The notes under the pieces were generated by a model, which had not been told where the DNA came from, did not search any database, and saw nothing but the letters and a program-made list of their open reading frames with translations. This document shows positions 4,531 through 63,923 of a stretch of 64,000 bases of DNA, piece after piece. The DNA lies in the IMG/VR virus record IMGVR_UViG_3300035182_002586, positions 1-64,000 of that record; one strand, written 5' to 3'. A program made the translations under genes and the position numbers. Position 1 is the first letter of the stretch; each line of letters starts with the position of its first letter.

Positions 4531-4645
4531 GTCTACCGCCTTTCCACGGATGCTCCCGAGGGAGCTGCCCTTAGATACACCGGCCGGAGGGCTCGGTAGG
4601 ATCAACAGGCGTGGGAAGGCAAGAGACAGAACCCTCAGAACGGAA

Positions 4646-4852
4646 TCACTCGCTCTTGGGGCTCTTCTGGCAGTAGACTACCTGGGGTTCGCCCCCACTT
4701 CGCTGGAGGACACACCAGCCGAAGGTTAAGTCATAGGCGAGAGCACGGGAAGGGTCCTCTGCGGCCAAAGCGCGAACGTCCTCGGGGGCATGACCCCAAT
4801 CGGACGGAGGCAGGATCCGCTTTTCGATCTGGCGGGCGTCAGGTTGATTCAT
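4646..4852 (-). CDS. hypothetical protein
   Basis: ATG preceded by AGTGTA motif variant at 12 nt. Confidence 0.55.
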   Translation of the reverse strand: MNQPDARQIEKRILPPSDWGHAPEDVRALAAEDPSRALAYDLTFGWCVLQRSGGEPQVVYCQKSPKSE

Positions 4853-4861
4853 GGCCCCACT

Positions 4862-5272
4862 CTACACTACTACTGCGAGGGCTGCCTTCGCCCCCACCAG
4901 CGCCACGAACTCTTTGGCGGCGTCTTCCACAGAGCCCTTGAATTTCAAGTCCTTCGAGGCTCCCGTGGACACGAACGCGTCCCCCTTGTTGACGTGAACG
5001 AACGCGAGGCTTCCGTCCGCGAGAGAAGCCGCAACCTCCCCGTCGTTGGTGATGTGCTCCAGGACGTGCTGTACGGCCTGGTCGTGCACACAGCACGGAC
5101 AGAGTACGTGCGTTTGCGCGTCCTCCGTCTCGGCCGTGGCCCACCCCTTCGGCAAGTCGACAGTGACGGTGAGCGGGGGCCCGAGGGAGAGAATCCGTAC
5201 CTGCTGCTCCGTTGCGATCGCCCGCTTCGAGCAAGCATCGCAAGACACCTGAGCCGGAATGACGATCGGCAT
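4862..5272 (-). CDS. hypothetical protein with two CxxC motifs
   Basis: CDAC and CPCC; packed in same-strand gene run. Confidence 0.6.
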   Translation of the reverse strand: MPIVIPAQVSCDACSKRAIATEQQVRILSLGPPLTVTVDLPKGWATAETEDAQTHVLCPCCVHDQAVQHVLEHITNDGEVAASLADGSLAFVHVNKGDAFVSTGASKDLKFKGSVEDAAKEFVALVGAKAALAVVV

Positions 5273-5283
5273 GACGGACCCCC

Positions 5284-5835
5284 TCAACGGTACTTACACG
5301 GCGCCCCTTCCATCCGGCACGCGCAGTTCGGCGGACACGGACGGTTCACACACGACCCTTTCACACGGCAGAAACAGTTCGGCGGGCACGGACAGGTCAT
5401 GGGGACCTCGTTTGCGTGCTCGCAGTACATCGCGTTGATCTCCTCTTCCCCCTCGTCCACCACAGGGGGCCCGGACCCGAGAGGGCGCGGTCCCGTCTCC
5501 GGTGTGCCGTCGACGAGGGTGTCCCACACCATGGCGGGGACCTTGAACGTGTGGAAGAGCGCCATGAGGCACGTCTCGCACATCGAGAAGCGGTAGGCCG
5601 TGAGGTGCTGGAGGATCTTGGACCCGTAACCGCCCTTCACTGTGAGGTTGACGATCCCCTCGGGGTAGCCGGCGCCTGCGGGGATGAGGTCCCCGCCGCA
5701 GGCATTGCACGGAGGGAGAGGCGGAGGCACTTCCTTGAGGCGCCGCGCTTGCAGATCCTTGAGGAGCCCCACCAGGGTCTCGTTCCCTGCCTGCTGAGCG
5801 TGCTCGATCTGCTGCTTCAGGGGGTCGTGCGCCAT
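5284..5835 (-). CDS. Cys-rich hypothetical protein
   Basis: CNAC, CETC and duplicated CPPNCxCR tail; start set by GGTGTA motif. Confidence 0.65.
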   Translation of the reverse strand: MAHDPLKQQIEHAQQAGNETLVGLLKDLQARRLKEVPPPLPPCNACGGDLIPAGAGYPEGIVNLTVKGGYGSKILQHLTAYRFSMCETCLMALFHTFKVPAMVWDTLVDGTPETGPRPLGSGPPVVDEGEEEINAMYCEHANEVPMTCPCPPNCFCRVKGSCVNRPCPPNCACRMEGAPCKYR

Positions 5836-5855
5836 GGCCGGGTCCGTACACCAGA

Positions 5856-6287
5856 TCACTCGGTGTCGGTATCCCCGTCCTGATAGAGCTGATCCCGCAG
5901 GACATCTACGCGGGCCGCGCGCTGTGAAACGCGGGCGCTCTGCGCTGCAAGACTGGAAGCCCGCATTCGGACGCCGTACACGTCACGCTTCCGGGCACTC
6001 TCGACCACACCCCACGCCTGGTCGAGCGCAGCGAGGGCGTCGTCCAGAGCCGCTGCCAGCTCGTCATCGATCCGGGAGATGATCTTGGCCCTCGGTACGG
6101 AGTCGGCCGGGCCGTACGGCTTGGCGCCCTCGGGCAGGTCGGGAAGACGCGCGGCGTCCGAAGTCTCGATCGTACTGGCCAGCGCTTCGATGTCCTTGGT
6201 GCTTCGGAGGAGCTGAACCAGGGTCACCCTCTGGTAGTCCCCGAGGTGAAGGTCGTCGACGCTGACGGGTTCGGTGGAGGGCTTCAT
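5856..6287 (-). CDS. hypothetical helical protein
   Basis: ATG 14 nt after GGTGTA motif. Confidence 0.65.
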   Translation of the reverse strand: MKPSTEPVSVDDLHLGDYQRVTLVQLLRSTKDIEALASTIETSDAARLPDLPEGAKPYGPADSVPRAKIISRIDDELAAALDDALAALDQAWGVVESARKRDVYGVRMRASSLAAQSARVSQRAARVDVLRDQLYQDGDTDTE

Positions 6288-50763: not shown

Positions 50764-51399
50764 CTACCGCATGAGGGCGGTGGGCTCACGATCCACACGG
50801 GGCCCGAGCACAGCCGACTGGAAGGCGTCGGCAACCCTCATGGCGGTGACCGACACGGTTTCCAAGGGGTGCTCCTCCCCCTTACCGCAAGAACCGCTGC
50901 ACTGGCCACCGCAAGAACCGCTGCACTGGCCACCACAAGTACCCGTACACGACCCCCCGCAAGTGCAACCACCCTCACAGGCGTGCAGGTACCTCGCAAG
51001 CACCCGGTGAGCTGTCTTCGACTCACTCTTGTACTGCACGGGTGTAGAGGCGGGAGCCATGGCTTCCTCCCCACCCTCGACGGAAGGGTCGCGGGTATCG
51101 TACGTGTGGTAGCGGTCTCCTTGGTAGTCGAGCAAGGGGACGGTCCGTGCGAGCGCCTCTCCCAACCAACGGGCGATGTCACTCGTCCCGAGGGGGAAAG
51201 ATCCGTCGACCATCGCACTCATGTGGGAGAACGAGTACTCGAACCGGTAGGACCTCGACACGGGCTCCAGCGTCGGCAAGTTCATCAGCGTAGCAGGGTC
51301 CCAAACCATCGCCTCCTCGACAATACGAAGAGTCAGCCCCCCGTTCCCCGTGTGGAAGTAGGACTCTTCGAGGACGCGTCGGGTGCGTTCAGTGCCCAT
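50764..51399 (-). CDS. hypothetical protein with RVLARY tag and Cys-Gly repeats
   Basis: HRVLARYLHA followed by (C..G.C)n; 24-bp tandem duplication 50884-50931. Confidence 0.65.
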   Translation of the reverse strand: MGTERTRRVLEESYFHTGNGGLTLRIVEEAMVWDPATLMNLPTLEPVSRSYRFEYSFSHMSAMVDGSFPLGTSDIARWLGEALARTVPLLDYQGDRYHTYDTRDPSVEGGEEAMAPASTPVQYKSESKTAHRVLARYLHACEGGCTCGGSCTGTCGGQCSGSCGGQCSGSCGKGEEHPLETVSVTAMRVADAFQSAVLGPRVDREPTALMR

Positions 51400-51406
51400 G
51401 GGTCCC

Positions 51407-52297
51407 TCAGGCCGCTACGGCGCGTTTGGAGACGGGCAGGAACTCTGACCCGTACTCGTTCATGAAGCGGAGCAGCCCACCCTGGTCGAGGATGTCCTGG
51501 TAGAACGTGCCCGGGACCGTGGGGTTCATCTCCCACGTGCAAAGGCGCACCGAAGTGGAGATACGGTCCAGCTTCTCGTTGAAGAATCGGTAGAACTGCC
51601 CCTGCTTCTCCCCAGCGCTGGACAGGGCGACCATCGAGGGGCCGGGAAGGCTTGACCCCACCACCGAAGGAAGCACAGCCTGGTAGAGGTCGGTACCACC
51701 ATCGTCGTGGTAGTACGCCATCTCGTCGAAGAGGACGAAGCTGTGCCGCACCCCGCAGAGACCCTTGAACCCGGCTGAACGCACCGTGATTCTCACGGAC
51801 GAGTTGTGGGTCTTGCAACCGCACACACAGTGGTTGGGGCTCGGGATCTGGATGGAGGAGGTCGTCTCCTGCGAGGGGGTGACGTGGCCCTCACGGACCG
51901 CCTTGCGGACCCCTTTCATCATGGTCTGAGCCATGGCGCGGTCGATCGTGAACCCGGCCACCGTCATCGCGCCGGGGTCCCGCTCCGCCTGCGCGAGTGC
52001 CGCCATCGCACGCTGGTAGAGCAGACGTGCCCCGAGGTAGGACTTGCCCGACCGGCGACCCGCTGCGAGGGCAACGAGTTGCTCCTCCGAGTTCACCTCA
52101 CGGGTGTTGGAGCGCCCCTCGTCGTAGAGGTAGACGAGGAAGTCCTTCTCCGTGAACAACCGCACGCGTCCGGTCAGGGGATGGGTGAACTCGACCCGAT
52201 CCGTATCTGACAGAGGAACCCCGTCCAGTACTTTCAAGGCGAATCGCTGACCGGGGTAGAGAGGGTACGCCCTCTCCGCGTGCTCGATGGTGTTCAT
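51407..52297 (-). CDS. ATPase-only paralog of terminase large subunit
   Basis: LYPGQRF, LYDEGR.N.RE, GRRSGKS, FDEMA, LSS, TWEMNP, F..EYG..F are colinear with the N-terminal half of TerL at 61177..63204. Confidence 0.8.
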   Translation of the reverse strand: MNTIEHAERAYPLYPGQRFALKVLDGVPLSDTDRVEFTHPLTGRVRLFTEKDFLVYLYDEGRSNTREVNSEEQLVALAAGRRSGKSYLGARLLYQRAMAALAQAERDPGAMTVAGFTIDRAMAQTMMKGVRKAVREGHVTPSQETTSSIQIPSPNHCVCGCKTHNSSVRITVRSAGFKGLCGVRHSFVLFDEMAYYHDDGGTDLYQAVLPSVVGSSLPGPSMVALSSAGEKQGQFYRFFNEKLDRISTSVRLCTWEMNPTVPGTFYQDILDQGGLLRFMNEYGSEFLPVSKRAVAA

Positions 52298-53205: not shown

Positions 53206-53865
53206 TTAGTGCAAATGACGCCCCCAGCTCGGGGCCGAGGTCGGATCGAAGGCCGTATCCTGCATGTCCACGAAGTTCGGCCAGTCGACGCCAGGCACGA
53301 CAAGCGCGATCTGGTAGCGCCAACGCTTGACCCCGTGCTCGTGGCCGGGCCCTAGGCGCTCCGCCACGTACCCGAACACATAGGACACGGAATCCTCGTG
53401 GTAGGGCTTCCGCAGCCGAACCCACGCACCCTCAGGAAGCTGCGGCTTCTCTGGCTCAACCTTCCGTCTTGCACCGGGCACCTCGACCCACTTGTGCACG
53501 AGGGCGGGCACGGTCGTGAACCCACTCTCAAGGGAGGCGTTCGTCCTGTGGATCCCGTCGTCGATGTGCAGTCTCCCCTCGTGCTCTGTGAGCTGTACGG
53601 GGGGCAGAGCCACACCGGCTGCGATCGCTGCCCGGACCTTCTCAATCCGGTCCTTGTGCCACACAGGGGGCACGCTGATGTGCGAGAGGGGCACCAGCTC
53701 GAACCGATACTCGTTGTGCCCTCCGAACTCCGCGTCCGACTCGGCCCTGGCCTCAGGGTTGTTGAGGGTGTGGAGCTGCGCGTGTACGACGCCTTCGTCG
53801 TAGCGGTAGTGCGTCGTCGACGCGACGAACCGCGCGGCAACCCGGAGGGCCAGCGGGGGCATCAC
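53206..53865 (-). CDS. ParB/Srx-like domain protein with N-terminal RVAARF tag
   Basis: LPPVQL......IDDGIHR motif. Confidence 0.7.
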   Translation of the reverse strand: MMPPLALRVAARFVASTTHYRYDEGVVHAQLHTLNNPEARAESDAEFGGHNEYRFELVPLSHISVPPVWHKDRIEKVRAAIAAGVALPPVQLTEHEGRLHIDDGIHRTNASLESGFTTVPALVHKWVEVPGARRKVEPEKPQLPEGAWVRLRKPYHEDSVSYVFGYVAERLGPGHEHGVKRWRYQIALVVPGVDWPNFVDMQDTAFDPTSAPSWGRHLH

Positions 53866-54131
53866 ACGTCGTCGGAGCGGAGGAGGTATTCGAGGCCCTC
53901 CTTGATGGACTTCACGAGCGCTTCGACACCCTCGTGGGTCGACTCCACCTGGTCGATCATCCAGTCGAGGGACTGCTCGGTGTGGAGCGTACGCGCGTGC
54001 TGGAGCGCCTTGTGGAGCGCAGCGTCAGCCACACGCAGCTCGGCGAGCATCGCCTTGGCGTTCCCCTCGATGTGAGGGTCCATCTGACGGCGGGCGTAGC
54101 GGTTGGCGACCTTCGAGGCGAGGGGGTCCAT
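53862..54131 (-). CDS. small helical protein with N-terminal KVANRY tag
   Basis: 89 aa; overlaps the next start. Confidence 0.65.
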   Translation of the reverse strand: MDPLASKVANRYARRQMDPHIEGNAKAMLAELRVADAALHKALQHARTLHTEQSLDWMIDQVESTHEGVEALVKSIKEGLEYLLRSDDV

Positions 54132-54554: not shown

Positions 54555-55877
54555 TCAACCCGTCGCTTCGGCCGGCGTAACGACGATGAGAGGGCGACGC
54601 GTGACCTCCGCCGCCTTCTCGCCTTTCACGACATCCGCCGTAACGGTGATCGAAGCGATCGTCGCGTCGCTAGGGGCATCGAACGAGTAGGGGCGAAGCA
54701 GGTCCTCGACGATCGACCGGAGGGCTCGGGCACCCGTCGGACGCGACTTCGCGAGGCGGCCGATCTCCAAGAGTGCGTCGTCCGTGAACACGAGGTCGAT
54801 GTTGTCGTAGGCAAAGAGGGCTCGGAACTGCTTGATGATCGAGTGCTTCGGCTCCGTGAGGACGCGCACCATGTCCGTGTCCGTCAGCGGGAGCGTCGAC
54901 GTGCGGACCGGGAGGCGGCCGAGCAGCTCGGGGATGATCCCGAAGTCCAGGATGTCCTCCTCCGTGATCGCCGAGTACACGTCGGTGAGGTCGAGCTTGC
55001 GCTTCGTACTCTCGTTGGCCCCGAAGCCCAAACGGGAACTCTTGTTGATGCGACGGTCGACCGTCTCCTGGATACCGTCGAACGACCCCGCGCAGACGAA
55101 CAGCACGTTGGTGGTGTCCAGCATGTCGAGGCTCGGTTTGGCCGTCCCGTCCGCGCCGATCGTGATGACAGTGCCGCCCTTCCCCATGCCGCGAGGCACC
55201 GGGACCATCGAGCCCTCGATGAGCTTGAGGAGGGACTGCTGCACGCCCTCTCCGCTCACGTCTCGGTAGCCGGAGGCGCCGCGCCCCGACTTGCGCGCGA
55301 GCTTGTCGAACTCGTCGATGAAAATGATGCCCCACTGCGCCTTCTCCGGGTCGCCGTTGGCCGCCTGGAGGAGCCCCTGGAGCATGCTCTCCACGTCGTC
55401 CCCCACGTATCCCGCCTGCGTCAGGCGGGTCGCATCGGCCACGTAGAAGGGCACCTTGAGCATCCGGGCGATGGCCCGGAACAGCTCGGTCTTGCCCGTA
55501 CCGGAGGGCCCGAGGAGCATGATGTTGCTCTTCTGGATCTCGACCCCTTCGGCCTTCTCGATCTTCGCGGCACGAGCACGGTCTCGCCGCTTGAAGTGGT
55601 TGTAGACCGCGACGGCCACGTCCTGCTTCGCTCGCTCTTGGGCGATGACGTGCTGGTCGAGAAACGCCTTGATCTCCCGGGGCTTGCGGAGCGGCTCTTC
55701 CTTGACCGTGGCCTTCTGACGGTGACGGTTCTCCGCCTCCATCGCCTCAGCGATCTCCCCGTTGCAACGGTCGCAGATCAGGACTTCGCCGCCCTGCTTG
55801 AGCGGTGCCGCGATGAGGTTGCGCACCTCGTTGCTGGCACGGTGGCAGACGTTACAGCGAAGGATCTCGTTGGCCAT
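54555..55877 (-). CDS. clpX: ATP-dependent Clp protease ATP-binding subunit ClpX
   Basis: C4 Zn domain, KSNI.LLGPSGTGKT, AGYVGDDVE, DEFDK, RDVSGEGVQQ, LGF loop, TGARALR. Confidence 0.95.
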   Translation of the reverse strand: MANEILRCNVCHRASNEVRNLIAAPLKQGGEVLICDRCNGEIAEAMEAENRHRQKATVKEEPLRKPREIKAFLDQHVIAQERAKQDVAVAVYNHFKRRDRARAAKIEKAEGVEIQKSNIMLLGPSGTGKTELFRAIARMLKVPFYVADATRLTQAGYVGDDVESMLQGLLQAANGDPEKAQWGIIFIDEFDKLARKSGRGASGYRDVSGEGVQQSLLKLIEGSMVPVPRGMGKGGTVITIGADGTAKPSLDMLDTTNVLFVCAGSFDGIQETVDRRINKSSRLGFGANESTKRKLDLTDVYSAITEEDILDFGIIPELLGRLPVRTSTLPLTDTDMVRVLTEPKHSIIKQFRALFAYDNIDLVFTDDALLEIGRLAKSRPTGARALRSIVEDLLRPYSFDAPSDATIASITVTADVVKGEKAAEVTRRPLIVVTPAEATG

Positions 55878-57452: not shown

Positions 57453-59264
57453 TCAGAAGCGGTTGTCTTCTCCGCCCCCACCCTCACCCTCAGGCTTCTT
57501 CTTCATCTTGAGCTTGAGATAGTGGGCGATGCGTTCGGCGATGTCCGTCTCCTCGGCGAGCTTACCCGCGACGCCCGTGGAGATACCACGGATGACCTCG
57601 TTGAACGTGGAGTCGTTCACCGTGAACATGTCTTCTTCGAGCTTCTTCTTCGTGTCCACCGGATCGATGTTGAACATCTCCAGGATGACGTCGATCGGCA
57701 CTGACCCCTTGATGTAGAGGTTGTTGAGGGCGTCGAACGTGTCCTGCGAGTCGCGCAGCGGCAGACGCGTGAACGTGAGCTTCGGGTAGAGGACGATCTC
57801 CTCCCCCCACTTGTCCTTCTCCACGAACCCCTTGCGCCGTGCGACGGGCTTGAAGAGATACTCTTCCACGTACTCCTGGAGCACGTCGCGGAGGAACATG
57901 TAGCGCGAGTTGATGACTTCGAGCTTGAGACGGTCGCCCGAGAAGAGGGTCTCGCCACTCATCAGCGACTCGGTGACGCCGAGCCCCGTGATGAGGTGCT
58001 TGTCCGTGATCTCGTACTCACCTGAGAGGTCGAGGAGGCGGTCCTTGCTGCCCATCTCCTCCCAGTGAACCTCGTAGTTCGCGACGATCGAGTAGTCCGG
58101 GTCCACGAGTGCAAGGTCAACCTGCTCGCGAAGCTGGTCGGTGTCGGACTCTGAGATACGGTCTCCCCAGACGATGCGCTTCGGGGTCATCGCACGGCTG
58201 GCGATCTGCGTCTGCGCCTGGCGGAGCTTCTCCTTGTAATAGAGGTCGCGGAGGCAGCGGTCGAGGATGGACTGGCCGAGTTCGTCCGTCGCACCACGAC
58301 GACCGGCGAGGTGGTAGACGAACGAGCCCTCGTCGGGGTCCGTACCAAGCGGGATCAAGCGTCCGCGCTCGATGTGCTCGCGCACCTCTTCGGGGATCTC
58401 TTGGGCCATCTGCTCGGCGATGGGGTCGCCGCCCATGCGCGCCTGCTCGATGAGCCCACGGTCTCGGTCGGAGGGGATCAGCTCGATGCGAACCTTGTCC
58501 GTGAAGCTGTACGTGGTGACCTTCACCTGGTCGAGGGGCATGATGATCAGGCGATCCCACCCCTTGTACTGCTTCCGGTAGTGGTTCAGCTCCTCTTCCT
58601 GACGGTTGGCCTTCTCGACCCACTCCGTCGACTCCTCCTCCATCGTCTCGCCGTCATCGGAAAGAACATCCCTCTTGACGACTCTCTGCTCGTAACCGAT
58701 CTCCGGAGGGAGCGGCACCTCTGAGTCTTCGGCGAAGATGAATGCGTTGCCGTCGAGCCAGTAGTGGTGAACTGCGGTGATCAAGCGCTGGAAGAGCTTG
58801 ATCCGCTTGCACATGCGATCGAAGAAGTTGAAGATGTACTTGCCGTAGTCGTCCGGCGAATCGAAGCCCTTCGGGCATGTACGCGGCTTCGGGGCCGCGA
58901 GTCTGACCTTCGAGAGCGGCAGCTCCGTGTGCAGGTCGATGGCCTGCCCGACCAGGGGGTCAGAGTTGTAGAAGTGTCGGTAGATCTCCCGCTTCTCGCG
59001 GAGGCTCTGCGGCAGCTCCAGGAAGTCGGTCGAGAGCTGCGGGGAGAAGAAGTTCGAGCCCGTGGAGATGGAGGTGTTCATCCCCATCCCGCCACCAGCC
59101 ATGGCCATGTCGAGGGCCGCGCCACGCTGGTTGAAGTTCGGGCCTCCCCCTGAGGGTCGGTTGAAAGTCCCCGTTCCCGTCCCAGCCGTTCGGCTGAACA
59201 CGTTGGGGCGGCTCACCATCCGGGCCTGACGGCGAGCCTCTCGCTCCTTGTCGGTGAGAGGCAT
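57453..59264 (-). CDS. phage portal protein
   Basis: About 600 aa, downstream of TerL; portal-like segments (FYNSDPLVGQAIDLH, HYWLDGNAFI, GQSILDRC, ITGLGV...L.SG). Confidence 0.7.
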   Translation of the reverse strand: MPLTDKEREARRQARMVSRPNVFSRTAGTGTGTFNRPSGGGPNFNQRGAALDMAMAGGGMGMNTSISTGSNFFSPQLSTDFLELPQSLREKREIYRHFYNSDPLVGQAIDLHTELPLSKVRLAAPKPRTCPKGFDSPDDYGKYIFNFFDRMCKRIKLFQRLITAVHHYWLDGNAFIFAEDSEVPLPPEIGYEQRVVKRDVLSDDGETMEEESTEWVEKANRQEEELNHYRKQYKGWDRLIIMPLDQVKVTTYSFTDKVRIELIPSDRDRGLIEQARMGGDPIAEQMAQEIPEEVREHIERGRLIPLGTDPDEGSFVYHLAGRRGATDELGQSILDRCLRDLYYKEKLRQAQTQIASRAMTPKRIVWGDRISESDTDQLREQVDLALVDPDYSIVANYEVHWEEMGSKDRLLDLSGEYEITDKHLITGLGVTESLMSGETLFSGDRLKLEVINSRYMFLRDVLQEYVEEYLFKPVARRKGFVEKDKWGEEIVLYPKLTFTRLPLRDSQDTFDALNNLYIKGSVPIDVILEMFNIDPVDTKKKLEEDMFTVNDSTFNEVIRGISTGVAGKLAEETDIAERIAHYLKLKMKKKPEGEGGGGEDNRF

Positions 59265-59355
59265 CGTGTGGTGTCCCCCGCTCGACGTGTAACCGCCAAT
59301 GCGCGAGGAGACCGTCGGGACGACGACCTGCCGCTGAGGCGAAACGTTCGTGAAG

Positions 59356-59829
59356 CTACCGGGAGGCATCGTCAACCAGCTCCTTGCCGTACAGTTCAAT
59401 CAAATCATCCATCGGCTCCCCCTCCGAACCCGACGGGCGAGTGACCGCAGAGGGGCTCATCGCCTCCTGCCGGGCCTCACGGGCCCGCCTCTGCTCGGTA
59501 GCCTCCCGGCGCCTCCGTTCCTGCTCTTCCCGCTGTTTCTCCTCCGCAAGGCTCCGGTGGCCCTCGTCGAGCATCCGGTCCGCCATCTCGGTGCGACGCA
59601 CAGCCTGTTGGACAAGGCCGGCAACACGTGCCCAGGCGTTGGCGTAGACCACGTGCATGGCCGCAACAGGGTCCGCCGAAGCGCGGCGGCCGTCACGTCT
59701 GGACCGCTCCAGAAGCGCCTTACACAGCTCCCCCATCCGCGCGGTCCCGCGCGTGATCCCTCCGTGGATCGCCCGGATTTCCGTGACGATCTCCGCGTAG
59801 GACATCTGTTGAGGGTTGTTGGAAGGCAT
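59356..59829 (-). CDS. hypothetical coiled-coil protein (head module)
   Basis: Between TerL and portal. Confidence 0.65.
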   Translation of the reverse strand: MPSNNPQQMSYAEIVTEIRAIHGGITRGTARMGELCKALLERSRRDGRRASADPVAAMHVVYANAWARVAGLVQQAVRRTEMADRMLDEGHRSLAEEKQREEQERRRREATEQRRAREARQEAMSPSAVTRPSGSEGEPMDDLIELYGKELVDDASR

Positions 59830-59835
59830 AAGGTC

Positions 59836-60354
59836 CTAGATGATGGTCTGAATCCCGAGGAACTGCCGGTTAATGGTGCTTGGAACCTGCGCTACGAACC
59901 CAACAGGGAGGGCCGGCGCCCTTGGATCTGCGGTGAGAGACAGCTCGTCTTCTTTGGTGAAGAGGCCGCGAAGGCTAAAGTAAAGCTCCTCCTGCGATCC
60001 GTAAAGGAGGGGAACGAGCGGACCCCCTCCAATCCTCGATGCGTACGTGTAGCGCTCGTACGAAGACGTGGAAATCAGGCTCGATCCCGAGACCATGACT
60101 CCGTACTTGTACGTGGGAAACTGGCGCGTCGACGCGATGTACTGGTCCGCCGGCTCGTCGCTCCCCCACAGGAGAAAGCCCCCAAAGCGCCCGGAAGAGT
60201 AGGTCACTACCCGGTCGTCCACCGACACGTCGACCCACTCGACGCCCTGACCCCCCGGCCACCCGTTGTTCACCATCGCCTGCGAGACCGTGACGGCGTA
60301 GATGTCCCCCCTCACGAGGAGCACACAGTCACGGGAACGAAGGATCTCGGGCAT
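59836..60354 (-). CDS. putative structural protein, paralog B
   Basis: Strong similarity to the adjacent 60364..60885. Confidence 0.75.
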   Translation of the reverse strand: MPEILRSRDCVLLVRGDIYAVTVSQAMVNNGWPGGQGVEWVDVSVDDRVVTYSSGRFGGFLLWGSDEPADQYIASTRQFPTYKYGVMVSGSSLISTSSYERYTYASRIGGGPLVPLLYGSQEELYFSLRGLFTKEDELSLTADPRAPALPVGFVAQVPSTINRQFLGIQTII

Positions 60355-60363
60355 CGGTAGTCC

Positions 60364-60885
60364 TCAGAACGAGGTTTGAATCGTGATGTAGTTGGAGGTA
60401 ACCCCTGTGGGGGACTGCGAGACGAACCCCACGATGTTCTCGTTCGGGGCTCGAATGTCCCCCGACAGTGCCCACTCGTCCTCCACTGTCCAGAGGCCCC
60501 GGAGGCTGAACCTGAGGTGGTCACTGGCCGTGTAGGTGAGCGGAACCAGAGGGCCGCCACCCGTACGTGAGGCGTACGTGTAGCGCTCGAACGCCACGGT
60601 CATGATGAGCCAGCGTCCGAAGGCCATCGTACCCGCACGGTACGTGGGCTGGTTCATTGTCATCGACGTGAACTGGTCGGCCGACTCGTTCGACCCCCAG
60701 ATCATGAAGCCCGCCACCTCCCCATCGGAGAGTTCGACCTCGAAGTCGTCCTTCGTGGACCCTGCCCACCGAACCCCGGTCCCACCTACCCACCCGGCAG
60801 TGGACATGGAGCTGGACAAGGTGGGCGTGATCGAGCGTCCCCGGGAGAGGATGATCAGATCACGGGATCGCGGGTTCTCGGACAT
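60364..60885 (-). CDS. putative structural protein, paralog A
   Basis: Shares WGS.E.ADQ, ERYTYASR.GGGPLVPL, FSLRGL.T.EDE with paralog B. Confidence 0.75.
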   Translation of the reverse strand: MSENPRSRDLIILSRGRSITPTLSSSMSTAGWVGGTGVRWAGSTKDDFEVELSDGEVAGFMIWGSNESADQFTSMTMNQPTYRAGTMAFGRWLIMTVAFERYTYASRTGGGPLVPLTYTASDHLRFSLRGLWTVEDEWALSGDIRAPNENIVGFVSQSPTGVTSNYITIQTSF

Positions 60886-61176: not shown

Positions 61177-63204
61177 TTACCGGCGGAACCGGAGACCGAG
61201 GCTCTTCGGGACGGCCCGCTCCGAGAAACCCCCGTGCATACGGGCTCGGGAGAGCTGATAGGCCCCCGTTCCCGCCGCCCGCGAGATGGTCGGTGTGGCT
61301 GTTGCTCCGTAAAGCGCGCGCCCTTGACCGAGCCTCTCCACAGAGAGCCAGACCGAACGTACAAGGGCGTCGCTCATGTCGTCGTGCTTGCCCTTCGGGG
61401 CCTCGACTTCGACGATGTTCTTGCTCACCTGCTCGGCTTGGAGAGTCATCAGCTCTGTGATGAGCGGGGAGTGCTTCAAGTTGTCCCCCACGCCTGCCGG
61501 GGGCGGCCAGTCGTAGAGACGAAGCTTGCGGTCGTACATGAGCAGCTTCGTCGCCTGGAACATCTGCGACGTGTCCATCTTCTGGAAACGCTCAGACCGG
61601 AACTGCTTGAGGCCGCGCTTGTGGAGGTTCTGCTCCAGTGAGAGCCCCTCCCACCGGTCGAAGATGACGTCGGTGATGTAGAAGCGCCTGCACATCACCT
61701 CCATCCAGTTGGCGATCTCGTCGAAGTCGAGGCGCTCCACGTCCCGGAGCGTGCGTGCGTACGGCGTCGTGAACTCGGTCAGGTGGGGGTTGGACTCCCG
61801 CCAGTCCGTACCCGCGTACCAGACCTCGTGATAGTCGATGACGATCACGTCGTCTTCCACGTGGGAAAGCACGAAGGCCGTACCGTCGCCGACAGCCGCG
61901 ACGTCGAGACCGCCCTGGTGCGGTGCCCGGGGGATGCCCTGGAGCCTCGGGCGATGCTCGGGGTCAATACAGGCGAGGAGGTCCTCGGGGCGTTCGATCC
62001 ACCCGCGCATACGGTCGGAGAAGCGCGCCCCGTGCTCCACCATGAAGCTGTTCGGGTCCGCGTGGAACCGCTGCCGGTAGTAGCTGATGGGGACCGACGG
62101 GTTGATCTCCCACGTCGGCATCTGGAGAGCGAGCATGTTCTCGGACCCCTCTCCCCTCGACATCGCGAGGTTGAAGAGGTCGAAGAACTGTCCCTGCTTG
62201 TTCAGGGGGGACGAGATGCAGATGATGCGGCTCTCGACCGGGTAGTCCGTCCCGTCGGGGTGCTTGAGCACCATCCCGTCCGGACCCTTCGGAGAGAAGG
62301 TCGCTGCGGAGGGCTGGACCGCCTTGTATATCTCCTCGGCCGAGGACCCACCTTCGTCGATGAAGTGAGCCATCTCGTCGAGGATGATGACGATGTTGCC
62401 CATACCACGGAGGCCCTTCGCGATACAGGGGCGGAACGTGACCCTGATCGAGGACTTGCCGTTGTAGCTGACGAACTTCCCGTCGGCGTGGCGGTTGTAC
62501 GTGCCGAAGGTGTCGAGGTCGAACGGTGTCTGGAGGTCTACGAACGTCTTGTTGTCGGAGAGCTTGTACGGGTGGAAGTACTCGCACCGCGCCATGTGAT
62601 TCGAGACTTCGCGGAAGAGAATCGCCGCCTGCTCCTTATCGGTAGCGACGCTGACGATCTGGATGGTGTTACCGTCCGGGAGACCGTAGTACTCCTGGGG
62701 GTTGTACATATTCAAGAGGCGGTAGACCTCGTACGAGGCGAAGATCGACGAGAGCATGGTCTTGCCCCCGCGACGCCCGATGGCGAGCACCAGCTCGCGT
62801 CGTTCGTGGTCCTGCTCTCGGATGTTGCAGCGTCCCTCGTCATAGAGGTGCCGCAGGTACTCCACCTCCGTGAAACGCCCTACGAGGTTCTCACGGAACA
62901 TGTCCCAGATCTCGATCGTCTTCTCCTTGTCATCGAGAGGGATGTGGTAGTAGAGCTTCACAATGAAGCGCTGGACTGGATAGAGCTTCCGATCCAGACC
63001 CCACTTGGACTCGATGTAGTCGATGACTGAGAAGATCTTGGGCTTCTTCGGCTGCGCCTGTCCTGTTGGGACGGGCATCATGGACGCGAGGTAGTCGTCG
63101 ACCTGAGGATCCTCGGTCCCGGTCCTCTCTGCTTCGACTTTGGCTTCTTGTGCGGCTTGGCGGAATAGCCCCGCCATCCCGCTGCCGCGTTTCGTGGCTG
63201 CCAT
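61177..63204 (-). CDS. terL: terminase large subunit
   Basis: Walker A GRRGGKT, Walker B IILDEMAH, ISSP, nuclease GLDVAAVGD, FD, HDDMSDA. Confidence 0.9.
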   Translation of the reverse strand: MAATKRGSGMAGLFRQAAQEAKVEAERTGTEDPQVDDYLASMMPVPTGQAQPKKPKIFSVIDYIESKWGLDRKLYPVQRFIVKLYYHIPLDDKEKTIEIWDMFRENLVGRFTEVEYLRHLYDEGRCNIREQDHERRELVLAIGRRGGKTMLSSIFASYEVYRLLNMYNPQEYYGLPDGNTIQIVSVATDKEQAAILFREVSNHMARCEYFHPYKLSDNKTFVDLQTPFDLDTFGTYNRHADGKFVSYNGKSSIRVTFRPCIAKGLRGMGNIVIILDEMAHFIDEGGSSAEEIYKAVQPSAATFSPKGPDGMVLKHPDGTDYPVESRIICISSPLNKQGQFFDLFNLAMSRGEGSENMLALQMPTWEINPSVPISYYRQRFHADPNSFMVEHGARFSDRMRGWIERPEDLLACIDPEHRPRLQGIPRAPHQGGLDVAAVGDGTAFVLSHVEDDVIVIDYHEVWYAGTDWRESNPHLTEFTTPYARTLRDVERLDFDEIANWMEVMCRRFYITDVIFDRWEGLSLEQNLHKRGLKQFRSERFQKMDTSQMFQATKLLMYDRKLRLYDWPPPAGVGDNLKHSPLITELMTLQAEQVSKNIVEVEAPKGKHDDMSDALVRSVWLSVERLGQGRALYGATATPTISRAAGTGAYQLSRARMHGGFSERAVPKSLGLRFRR

Positions 63205-63215
63205 TCAGGATCCGA

Positions 63216-63923
63216 TCAGCGCTTCGCGAGTTGCACCGAGGCGCGTTCCTCCCACCCCTCCAGCTTCGTCATGAGACGGTTGGTGAGGAGGTCGAGTTCT
63301 TCGGTCTTGAGGACTTCGCCTGCGACGGCCAGGACTGACTGCACCCACAGCTTGAAGACCGCCTGGAACTTCTCGCTGTGCAGGTCGAGAAGGTCACCAC
63401 CGAGCTTCTTGATCTCCAGCTCGATGTTCGCGATCTTCGTCAGGGCGTCGATGCGGCGCGTCGAGATCTGCGCGGTGTCCTTGCCGAGCTTCTCGTTCTC
63501 GATGCGCTGGAACTGGAGAGCCGCCGACTCCTTGGCGACTTCTGCCTTCACGAGATGCAGGATCTCCGCTGAGTCCGCCTTGCCGAGGGCAGCCCGCAGG
63601 ATCGGGTCGTTCTGAACGAACTTCTGCTTCTCGTTCGACATCTCCGCGTGGTATTCGAGGTCCGATGTCGTCGGCATCCTCTCGACCTTGCGCGGCCGCC
63701 CACGCTGGCGCGTCACCTTGAGGTCGTTCTTCCCCGTTCGCGGCGCTGCGTGCACCGGAAGAAGACGAAGCACGTTGCCCTCACGGTCATCCGAACCGCC
63801 TTCGGCCTCCCCGGACTCGCCGATCGGGTCTGCGTCGTCGACATCTTGCCCCTCGCCTTCATCGGCGGTGGCCTCGTCGATCACTCGCTCCAGCTCGTCG
63901 TCATGTTCCGCAGACATGCTCAT
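63216..63923 (-). CDS. probable terminase small subunit
   Basis: Immediately upstream of TerL; AT-hook-like RGRPRK and helical C-terminus. Positional inference. Confidence 0.5.
   Translation of the reverse strand: MSMSAEHDDELERVIDEATADEGEGQDVDDADPIGESGEAEGGSDDREGNVLRLLPVHAAPRTGKNDLKVTRQRGRPRKVERMPTTSDLEYHAEMSNEKQKFVQNDPILRAALGKADSAEILHLVKAEVAKESAALQFQRIENEKLGKDTAQISTRRIDALTKIANIELEIKKLGGDLLDLHSEKFQAVFKLWVQSVLAVAGEVLKTEELDLLTNRLMTKLEGWEERASVQLAKR

What the first reader, a model, noticed from the sequence alone, without database searches (positions are those of the whole stretch)
51407..52297. Second, nuclease-less terminase ATPase paralog
Seen: a 296-aa protein colinear with TerL (LYPGQRF/LYPVQRF, LYDEGRSNTRE/LYDEGRCNIRE, GRRSGKS/GRRGGKT, DEMAYY/DEMAHF, TWEMNP/TWEINP, FMNEYGSEF/FMVEHGARF). 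It stops at the ATPase-nuclease hinge, is diverged but keeps intact Walker motifs, and lies 9 kb from terL among tagged genes. Known: Avs/STAND defences sense the TerL ATPase domain. Inference: a motor-only subunit of a heteromeric packaging ring, a packaging regulator, a protein-cargo loader, or a decoy for terminase-sensing immunity.
Basis: partly seen in the sequence, partly recalled or inferred. Interest (0 to 1): 0.7.

Follow-up and report, generated by a model that had tools for sequence, protein, structure and literature searches.

The report
Nuclease-less terminase ATPase paralog family
A 529-kb phage carries, besides its normal DNA-packaging enzyme, a short fast-evolving copy of only that enzyme's ATPase half; the copy belongs to an apparently undescribed family found in many huge phages, whose members often have broken catalytic residues, so it is more likely a helper or regulator than a second motor.

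Summary
Window 51407-52297(-) encodes a 296-aa protein collinear with residues 74-395 of the 675-aa TerL at 61177-63204(-) (30% identity, E 8e-34). Its AlphaFold model (pLDDT 93) matches TerL ATPase domains. It ends at the ATPase-nuclease linker, and the 529-kb genome holds no second nuclease domain.

It is not a remnant. It sits in a well-supported clade of 14 short proteins, inside a larger set of about 45-60 ATPase-only TerL paralogs from huge-phage contigs (80-660 kb). The order terL...portal-ClpX-like...paralog-DUF1848 recurs in two independent assemblies. In five other contigs one or two short copies lie directly upstream of terL.

"Intact motifs" is only partly right. Walker A, Walker B and the C-motif are kept, but the trans arginine finger (P74-26 R139) is Cys181. 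The syntenic orthologue in a 659-kb phage lacks the Walker A lysine, and 30 of 45 family members have lost at least one catalytic element.

A related population shows 9 synonymous to 17 nonsynonymous changes in the paralog against 36 to 2 in TerL. One relative, LR745208.1, lacks the gene.

Most likely it is a dispensable, non-motor accessory or regulator of the terminase. An anti-defence decoy remains possible. The mechanism is untested.

The parts
51407..52297 (-). Nuclease-less TerL ATPase-domain paralog, 296 aa (stop codon included)
52040..52060 (-). Walker A / P-loop, GRRSGKS (G80-S86, K85)
51755..51757 (-). Cys181, at the position of the trans-acting arginine finger (P74-26 TerL R139; R266 of this phage's TerL)
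51722..51727 (-). Walker B Asp191 and catalytic Glu192
51617..51622 (-). C (coupling) motif, Ser226-Ser227
61177..63204 (-). Full-length TerL, 675 aa: ATPase domain to about residue 400, then nuclease domain (invariant D434, D516, D609)
63216..63923 (-). Conserved gene X directly upstream of terL. It has an AT-hook-like RGRPRK motif and a helical C-terminal half, and is a candidate small terminase. In relatives the short paralog(s) lie between X and terL
57453..59399 (-). Portal protein (true start probably at Met46 of this ORF)
54555..55877 (-). ClpX-like AAA+ ATPase, syntenic neighbour in L008 and L090
49883..50734 (-). DUF1848 protein. In L008 and L090 it is the gene immediately after the short paralog

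Best explanation
Shown: the gene encodes a folded, maintained, ATPase-domain-only paralog of the large terminase. It belongs to an old paralog family that huge phages carry alongside a complete TerL, usually directly upstream of terL and here moved 9 kb downstream, past the portal and a ClpX-like gene. Inferred: it is a dispensable accessory or regulatory partner of the terminase/portal machinery, not a force-generating motor subunit. It keeps the P-loop, the catalytic Glu and the lid motifs, so it probably still binds nucleotide. It lacks several things a motor subunit would need. It has no trans arginine finger, so it cannot activate a neighbouring subunit's ATP site. It has no N-terminal extension, no nuclease domain and no C-terminal arm of TerL. 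Its likely action is through TerL-like contacts with TerL, DNA or gene X, modulating assembly, initiation, DNA gripping or the timing of cleavage. Catalysis is not the conserved function of the family.
For: Homology and fold. Length and ends: lengths are bimodal, and 53 short proteins start within 15 residues of the profile start and end within 25 residues of its end. Phylogeny: all full-length TerLs form one clade (100/99) and the window protein sits in a clade of 14 short proteins (98/96), so this is not a recent copy of its own TerL. Co-occurrence with a complete TerL in the same contig: window, L090 (659 kb), L093, L095, L096, L017, L020. Synteny with L008 and L090. Gene X upstream of terL is homologous to the gene upstream of the [short-terL] pair in L093, L095 and L096. 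Catalytic erosion: Cys181 replaces the finger (role of R139 from bioRxiv 10.1101/080440). The L090 orthologue has GRRSGAT. Of 45 short members, 15 keep everything, 9 lose the finger only, 10 lose a Walker residue only, and 11 lose both. All non-intein full-length TerLs keep all of these residues. Weak constraint: orthologues are 31-34% identical where TerL is 59%, portal 66-72% and ClpX-like 57-59%. In run X4 the paralog shows 9 synonymous to 17 nonsynonymous codons against 36 to 2 in TerL, Fisher p 2.6e-7, with no frame-breaking indels. Dispensability: LR745208.1 (485 kb) has TerL only, with a TnpB gene where relatives carry the short copy.
Against: There is no direct evidence of binding to TerL, portal, DNA or gene X. 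The co-fold with TerL scored 0.26, below the mark of 0.34, which counts as no answer. This copy keeps all cis catalytic motifs, so ATPase activity is not excluded. The syn/nonsyn counts come from the 40 best-supported of more than 200 variant sites per region, from Logan contigs of a mixed population. Fast evolution, patchy presence and variable copy number fit a conflict (anti-defence) gene at least as well as a machine accessory. Gene X is not proven to be TerS.
Confidence: 0.45

Rival explanations
1. It is a catalytically active motor subunit. The paralog would co-assemble with TerL into a heteromeric packaging ring and hydrolyse ATP to help translocate the 529-kb genome, diluting the number of nuclease domains at the motor.
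For: Walker A, Walker B, the catalytic Glu and the C-motif are intact in this copy. The gene lies in the packaging/head module and relatives lie directly next to terL. The complete ATPase fold is predicted with high confidence.
Against: The arginine finger is Cys181, and the equivalent R139A mutation in P74-26 abolishes activity. The syntenic orthologue P0011 lacks the Walker A lysine, and 30 of 45 family members have a catalytic lesion. Losses of the active site and of the finger are not complementary (Fisher p 0.38). Constraint is much weaker than on TerL. The protein lacks the TerL N-terminal extension and the C-terminal arm, which is proposed to contact the portal in D6E TerL (PMC5727402 abstract). 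The gene is absent from LR745208.1.
Confidence: 0.15
2. It is an anti-defence decoy or sponge. As a TerL ATPase-domain look-alike, it would occupy terminase-sensing host receptors (Avs1-3 type) or another TerL-directed factor without triggering them. Alternatively it would poison the terminase of competing phages.
For: The gene evolves fast, with a dN/dS of about 0.6 by my crude estimate from the counts, against about 0.02 for TerL. Presence is patchy, with 0, 1 or 2 copies, and the position is variable. Catalytic residues erode while the fold is retained. Avs sensors are reported to recognise the TerL fold, including its ATPase domain, as monomers (PMC13581612 and PMC11564622). The PhiV-1 TerL chain from the Avs3 complex is among the fold matches (8dgc_E).
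Against: No TerL-mimic decoy has been described in the papers I searched. A faithful mimic would be expected to activate Avs, not block it. The host and its defences are unknown, and there are no relatives in GTDB genomes. Tight operon linkage to terL, gene X and portal points to a packaging role. The padloc library was not scanned and no interaction test was possible.
Confidence: 0.15
3. It is a neutral remnant of a duplicated terL that is decaying.
For: The nonsynonymous fraction is high. The arginine finger is lost. One related phage lacks the gene.
Against: The reading frame is open, with the same start and the same end at the linker, in 50 or more proteins that are only 25-46% identical. 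There are 34-40 invariant positions among the closest five. The model has pLDDT 93. Divergent population variants carry no frame-breaking indels. The syntenic position is kept across phages whose TerLs are 59% identical. The duplication predates the sampled TerL radiation.
Confidence: 0.03
4. It is one half of an ordinary split terminase, with the nuclease half encoded elsewhere. Alternatively it is an artefact of two phage genomes assembled together.
For: One relative, L095, has a 148-aa paralog of part of the nuclease domain. terL is commonly used as a single-copy marker to detect chimeric assemblies (bioRxiv 10.1101/2025.02.27.640493).
Against: A sensitive tblastn of the TerL nuclease half against all 528,957 bases finds only TerL itself. 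TerL is complete, with all invariant residues. The same gene order recurs in independent assemblies from other samples (L008, L090). Identical sequence is present in at least three runs from different studies.
Confidence: 0.02

Closest known systems
Large terminase subunit (TerL) ATPase domain, for example Thermus phage P74-26 TerL (PDB 4ZNI/4ZNK/4ZNL/7KS4) and T4 gp17
   Same: Same ASCE P-loop fold (Foldseek E 8e-12, TM 0.6-0.68; profile hit E 6e-10). It keeps the P-loop with its arginines, Walker B with the catalytic Glu, the C-motif, and the lid motifs TWEMNP and EYGxEF. It ends exactly where the crystallised P74-26 ATPase-domain construct ends.
   Different: It has no nuclease domain, no N-terminal extension and no C-terminal arm. 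The trans arginine finger is replaced by Cys. It is encoded in addition to a complete TerL, and it evolves much faster.
phi29-type packaging ATPase (gp16; phi28 gp11, PDB 7JQ6)
   Same: Both are terminase-related packaging ATPases of about 300-330 aa with no nuclease activity. There is a weak fold match (E 1e-4).
   Different: gp16 is the only packaging ATPase of its phage and has a vestigial nuclease-like C-terminal domain (from general knowledge). Here a complete TerL coexists and the protein stops at the linker.
Non-catalytic paralogous subunits of ring ATPases (F1 alpha, clamp-loader delta/delta-prime, Rad51 paralogs), as an analogy only
   Same: A duplicated P-loop subunit keeps the fold while catalytic residues erode, and it is encoded beside the catalytic paralog.
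   Different: In those machines the dead subunit is obligatory, strongly conserved, and loses its sites in a complementary way. Here the losses are not complementary, constraint is weak, and the gene can be absent.
Herpesvirus terminase accessory subunits (pUL28/pUL33 with pUL15)
   Same: They illustrate a TerL-type ATPase/nuclease working with extra dedicated subunits (PMC7196598, listed).
   Different: Those accessory subunits are not TerL paralogs. No homology is implied.

Membership tests
TerL ATPase-domain superfamily (Pfam TerL_ATPase / Terminase_6N / MJ0330_N; PHROG phrog_2) | Significant sequence similarity to TerL ATPase domains | tested here: met
   BLASTP E 8e-34 to the phage's own TerL. 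phrog_2 at 4.5e-10. The family profile hits P74-26 TerL at 6.4e-10. No Pfam hit for the single sequence at E 0.01 or better. Homologues carry precomputed PF27249 hits.
TerL ATPase-domain superfamily | ASCE P-loop fold with a lid subdomain | tested here: met
   AF2 model with pLDDT 93.3 and pTM 0.92. The top 32 PDB matches are all TerL structures.
TerL ATPase-domain superfamily | Walker A, Walker B with catalytic Glu, and C-motif | tested here: met
   GRRSGKS at 80-86, D191 E192, S226 S227.
TerL ATPase-domain superfamily | Trans-acting arginine finger (P74-26 R139) | tested here: not met
   Cys181 aligns with the Arg that differs between 4ZNI and the R139A mutant 4ZNJ. The Arg is invariant in the 45 non-intein full-length relatives.
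Large terminase subunit (functional TerL) | C-terminal RNase H-fold nuclease domain | tested here: not met
   The protein ends 10 residues after the ATPase domain. There is no nuclease remnant downstream or anywhere else in the genome.
Large terminase subunit (functional TerL) | Sole, essential, strongly conserved packaging enzyme of the phage | tested here: not met
   A complete TerL is present. The paralog is absent from LR745208.1. Syn:nonsyn is 9:17 against 36:2 for TerL.
Split terminase (ATPase and nuclease as separate genes) | A separate nuclease-domain gene and no full-length TerL | tested here: not met
phi29 gp16-type nuclease-less packaging ATPase | The only packaging ATPase in the genome, with a vestigial nuclease-like C-terminal domain | tested here: not met
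   A full TerL coexists and there is no C-terminal domain. The fold match to phi28 gp11 is weak, E 1e-4.
Small terminase (TerS) | Small oligomeric DNA-recognition protein encoded upstream of terL | tested here: not met
   Relatives occupy the upstream-of-terL position, but the fold is that of the TerL ATPase. A separate conserved gene X occupies the position further upstream.
Anti-defence decoy of TerL-sensing Avs | Binds the Avs sensor domain and prevents activation | not testable with these tools
   The host and its Avs repertoire are unknown. No described precedent was found.

The most novel reading that the evidence does not exclude
Huge phages have repeatedly kept TerL-derived pseudo-ATPases as conflict proteins. 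These would be molecular mimics of the terminase ATPase domain that soak up or blind terminase-sensing immune receptors (Avs1-3 type), or that poison the packaging motors of competing phages. That would explain their fast evolution, variable copy number, catalytic decay and dispensability.
Probability: 0.15. Interest if true: 0.85.

Novelty: new variant of a known kind. Interest (0 to 1): 0.62.

Why it matters
TerL is treated as the universal, single-copy hallmark of tailed phages. This result shows a sizeable family of ATPase-only TerL paralogs that coexist with a complete TerL in phages of roughly 250-660 kb. I found no description of it in the papers searched.

If these proteins modulate the motor, they bear on how very long genomes are packaged without premature cleavage or slippage. 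If they are mimics aimed at terminase-sensing immunity, they would be a new class of counter-defence.

There is also a practical consequence. Short terL-like genes can confuse terL-based phylogenies and 'two terL genes means chimeric assembly' checks for huge phages.

Tried and rejected
I did not resend those rows. The run with the two window proteins alone gave 'no answer', score 0.26, and is not used as evidence.

2. I tested whether family members lose either their own active site or the arginine finger but not both, as expected for an obligate heteromeric ring. They do not. The counts are 15/9/10/11, Fisher p 0.38.

3. I considered pairwise dN/dS between family members. The closest pairs differ by 1 aa and the others are 46% identical or less, so dS is saturated. 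I used population variants from run X4 instead.

4. Search for a second nuclease domain in the genome: none found.

5. Search for relatives in GTDB species genomes, to find a host: none found.

6. Gene X as a proven TerS: its model is helical with a disordered, AT-hook-like N-terminus, but it has no significant PDB or PHROG match. It remains a candidate only.

7. The neighbour at 53206-53865 looked ParB-like by eye (DGIHR). Pfam gives nothing even at E 5, so I dropped the idea.

8. A DNA-level 'tag' near the neighbouring genes: no convincing repeat.

9. Net charge and pI of the short clade against TerL ATPase domains: no clear difference.

10. The local Pfam copy does not report PF27249, so membership of that model could not be scored for the window protein.

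Full report
**Source of the window.** The window is the first 64 kb of a 528,957-bp IMG/VR virus record. The record is classed as a provirus, with CheckV completeness 100, and is about 64% G+C. The same protein is also on record on a 620-kb contig. Sequence identical over the parts covered occurs in runs from sediment and microbial-mat studies, and a relative differing at roughly one site in ten occurs in a groundwater run.

**Check of the observation.**
- The 675-aa ORF at 61177-63204(-) is the TerL. It hits phrog_2 'terminase large subunit' at 3.9e-20 and gives a weak Pfam TerL_ATPase hit.
- BLASTP aligns paralog 13-286 with TerL 74-395 at 30% identity, E 8e-34. All quoted motif pairs are present.
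- The paralog ends 10 residues after NEYGSEF. The first invariant nuclease aspartate of TerL is D434, so the protein stops in the interdomain linker.

**Fold.**
- With a 95-sequence alignment, AlphaFold2 gives pLDDT 93.3 and pTM 0.92.
- Foldseek returns TerL ATPase domains as the top 32 PDB matches. The best is Thermus phage P74-26 (E 8e-12, TM 0.59-0.68), followed by T4 gp17, D6E, Sf6 and HK97. The PhiV-1 TerL chain of the Avs3 complex is also among them.
- A profile of the family hits P74-26 TerL by sequence at 6.4e-10.

**Not a split terminase, a remnant or a chimera.**
- A sensitive tblastn of the TerL nuclease half against the whole genome finds only TerL itself. The ATPase half finds only TerL and the paralog.
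- The database holds four word-sharing homologues of 288-315 aa.
- A full profile search finds 247 proteins at E 1e-30 or better. Among the best 150 the lengths are bimodal, about 290-350 aa and about 585-680 aa, plus intein-bearing TerLs.
- Fifty-three short proteins begin within 15 residues of the profile start and end within 25 residues of its end. Full-length TerLs carry a 20-60-residue N-terminal extension and a 250-300-residue C-terminal nuclease part.

**Phylogeny.**
- I built a careful tree (LG+C20 PMSF, 57 rows).
- It places all full-length TerLs in one clade (100/99).
- It places the window paralog in a separate clade of 14 short proteins (98/96).
- The phage's own TerL is not the paralog's sister, so the duplication is older than the sampled TerL radiation.
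- One short protein, P0010, falls inside the TerL clade and is probably a fragment.

**Genomic context of relatives.**

| Locus | Contig size | Arrangement |
|---|---|---|
| L090 | 659 kb | terL (with intein), 85-aa gene, three 173-aa paralogs, 147-aa gene, portal, ClpX-like, ..., short paralog, DUF1848, further shared genes. Same order as the window |
| L008 | 6.8 kb | Same order as the window, over the part it covers |
| L093 | 152 kb | Short copy directly upstream of terL |
| L095 | 232 kb | Short copy directly upstream of terL |
| L020 | 81 kb | Short copy directly upstream of terL |
| L096 | 280 kb | Two copies (about 384 aa and about 316-323 aa) in tandem upstream of terL |
| L017 | 257 kb | Two copies in tandem upstream of terL |
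| L005, L092 (490-kb NCBI contig), L094 | see note | Short gene stands alone within 10 kb on each side |

- The gene upstream of terL in the window (63216-63923, 'X') is homologous to the gene upstream of the [short-terL] block in L093, L095 and L096. The window's lineage therefore probably moved the short gene from between X and terL to its present place.
- X is very widely conserved, with more than 250 clusters at 52-75% identity. It has an invariant RGRPRK motif and a helical C-terminal half. It has no fold or family match. It is a candidate TerS, no more.
- The 485-kb phage LR745208.1 has a 639-aa TerL that is 47% identical to the window's. It has no short copy anywhere, and an IS605-type TnpB gene sits directly upstream of terL.
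- The other 75 IMG/VR loci that match the family profile show only a single full-length TerL-type ORF within the stretch held, up to 10 kb on each side.
- No relative exists in the GTDB species genomes.

**Catalytic motifs.**
- The window paralog keeps Walker A (GRRSGKS, K85), Walker B with the catalytic Glu (D191 E192) and the C-motif (S226 S227).
- The Arg of 'KGLRG' is Cys181.
- That Arg aligns with the one residue that differs between PDB 4ZNI and the R139A mutant 4ZNJ of P74-26 TerL.
- R139 is described as the trans-acting arginine finger, critical for ATP hydrolysis, and its mutation also abolishes DNA binding and nuclease activity (bioRxiv 10.1101/080440).
- All 45 non-intein full-length relatives keep the Walker A Lys-Ser/Thr, the Walker B Asp-Glu and this Arg.
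- Among 45 short proteins, 15 keep all three elements, 9 have lost only the Arg, 10 have lost only a Walker residue, and 11 have lost both. The losses are not complementary (Fisher p 0.38).
- Within the window's own clade, the syntenic orthologue in L090 reads GRRSGAT. P0013 and P0019 have Lys-Asn in Walker A and Ser-Glu or Glu-Glu in Walker B.
- What stays conserved in the clade is the N-terminal LxPxQxFxLK motif, the P-loop glycines and arginines, Glu192, Ser226, PTWExNP and ExGAxF.
- The conserved property is therefore the fold, and perhaps nucleotide binding, but not hydrolysis.

**Rate of evolution.**
- Between the window and L090, TerL is 59% identical, portal 66%, ClpX-like 59% and DUF1848 50%. 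The paralog is 31% identical. L008 gives the same picture.
- Terminal branches of short proteins are two to three times longer than those of TerLs.
- I laid Logan contigs of the groundwater run X4 on the region. Of the variant sites the tool listed, those in the paralog fall in 9 synonymous and 17 nonsynonymous codons, with no frame-breaking indel inside the gene.
- The same run on terL gives 36 synonymous and 2 nonsynonymous codons. Fisher p is 2.6e-7.
- With 218 synonymous and 670 nonsynonymous sites in the paralog, I estimate dN/dS at roughly 0.6. For TerL it is about 0.02.
- The listed sites are the 40 best supported of more than 200 per region and come from a mixed population, so the numbers are rough. 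The contrast is large all the same.

**Interpretation.**
- The gene is real, old and maintained, yet weakly constrained, dispensable in at least one relative, variable in copy number and position, and catalytically eroding across its family.
- It lacks the TerL N-terminal extension, the nuclease domain and the C-terminal arm. That arm is proposed to contact the portal in D6E TerL (PMC5727402 abstract).
- These facts argue against a force-generating ring subunit.
- They fit a non-motor partner that acts through TerL-like contacts. Its repeated placement between gene X and terL, or inside the portal module, ties it to packaging.
- I rate an accessory or regulatory role at the terminase as most likely (0.45).
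- An active heteromeric-motor role and an anti-defence decoy role each get about 0.15. The literature searched confirms that Avs sensors recognise TerL, including its ATPase domain, but describes no TerL-mimic decoy.
- The co-fold with TerL gave no answer.

**Novelty.** Searches for terminase paralogs, second or truncated large terminases, and huge-phage terminase copies found no description of such a family. Automatic cluster names in the ESM Atlas show that short MJ0330_N-type proteins exist but carry no function. I class this as a new variant of a known kind: the TerL ATPase domain, here as a stand-alone and often pseudo-enzymatic paralog family.

Noticed in passing
window 54555-55877 (-): A ClpX-like AAA+ protein (ClpX zinc finger, AAA_2, ClpB_D2-small) lies between the portal and the paralog. 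It is conserved at 57-59% identity and in the same position in L008 and L090. A phage unfoldase inside the head/packaging module is unusual.
   Followed up: partly
window 59836-60354 and 60364-60885 (-): Two tandem paralogous genes (172 and 173 aa, 50% identical) lie between terL and the portal. L090 has three copies. They match no family.
   Followed up: partly
window 53862-54131, 53206-53865 (-); genome about 86,030 (-); L090 9297-9980; L008 4682-5365: These otherwise unrelated proteins share an N-terminal motif, M(D)PLAxKVAxRF, and include the gene just upstream of the paralog in L090 and L008. Its meaning is unknown.
   Followed up: partly
window 50764-51399 (-), repeat 50884-50931: A 211-aa ORF directly after the paralog has a Cys/Gly-rich stretch (CGGQCSGS repeated) encoded by a perfect 24-nt tandem repeat. 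It is absent from L090 and L008, where DUF1848 follows the paralog directly.
   Followed up: partly
window 63216-63923 (-): Gene X upstream of terL has an invariant RGRPRK (AT-hook-like) motif in a disordered N-terminal part and a helical C-terminal half. It has more than 250 clusters at 52-75% identity and no Pfam, PHROG or PDB match. It is a candidate small terminase for this huge-phage group.
   Followed up: partly
L090 1-2768; L096 10951-14157; L017; L020: The TerLs of several relatives are interrupted by inteins with LAGLIDADG domains (1068-1140 aa). The window's TerL has no intein.
   Followed up: no
L095 13140-13586: A 148-aa ORF downstream of terL is a paralog of the N-terminal part of the TerL nuclease domain (35-38% identity to TerL residues about 400-510). 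Both TerL domains have therefore spawned stand-alone copies in this phage group.
   Followed up: no
L009 (LR745208.1) 4599-5900: An IS605-type TnpB gene (OrfB_IS605, Cas12f1-like TNB) lies directly upstream of terL, and a second similar gene lies downstream on the other strand. This 485-kb phage has no short TerL paralog.
   Followed up: partly
window 51400-51484 (run X4): One contig of the groundwater relative replaces the last ~26 codons of the paralog and the intergenic spacer with 84 unlike bases of nearly the same length, so the C-terminal tail is hypervariable.
   Followed up: no
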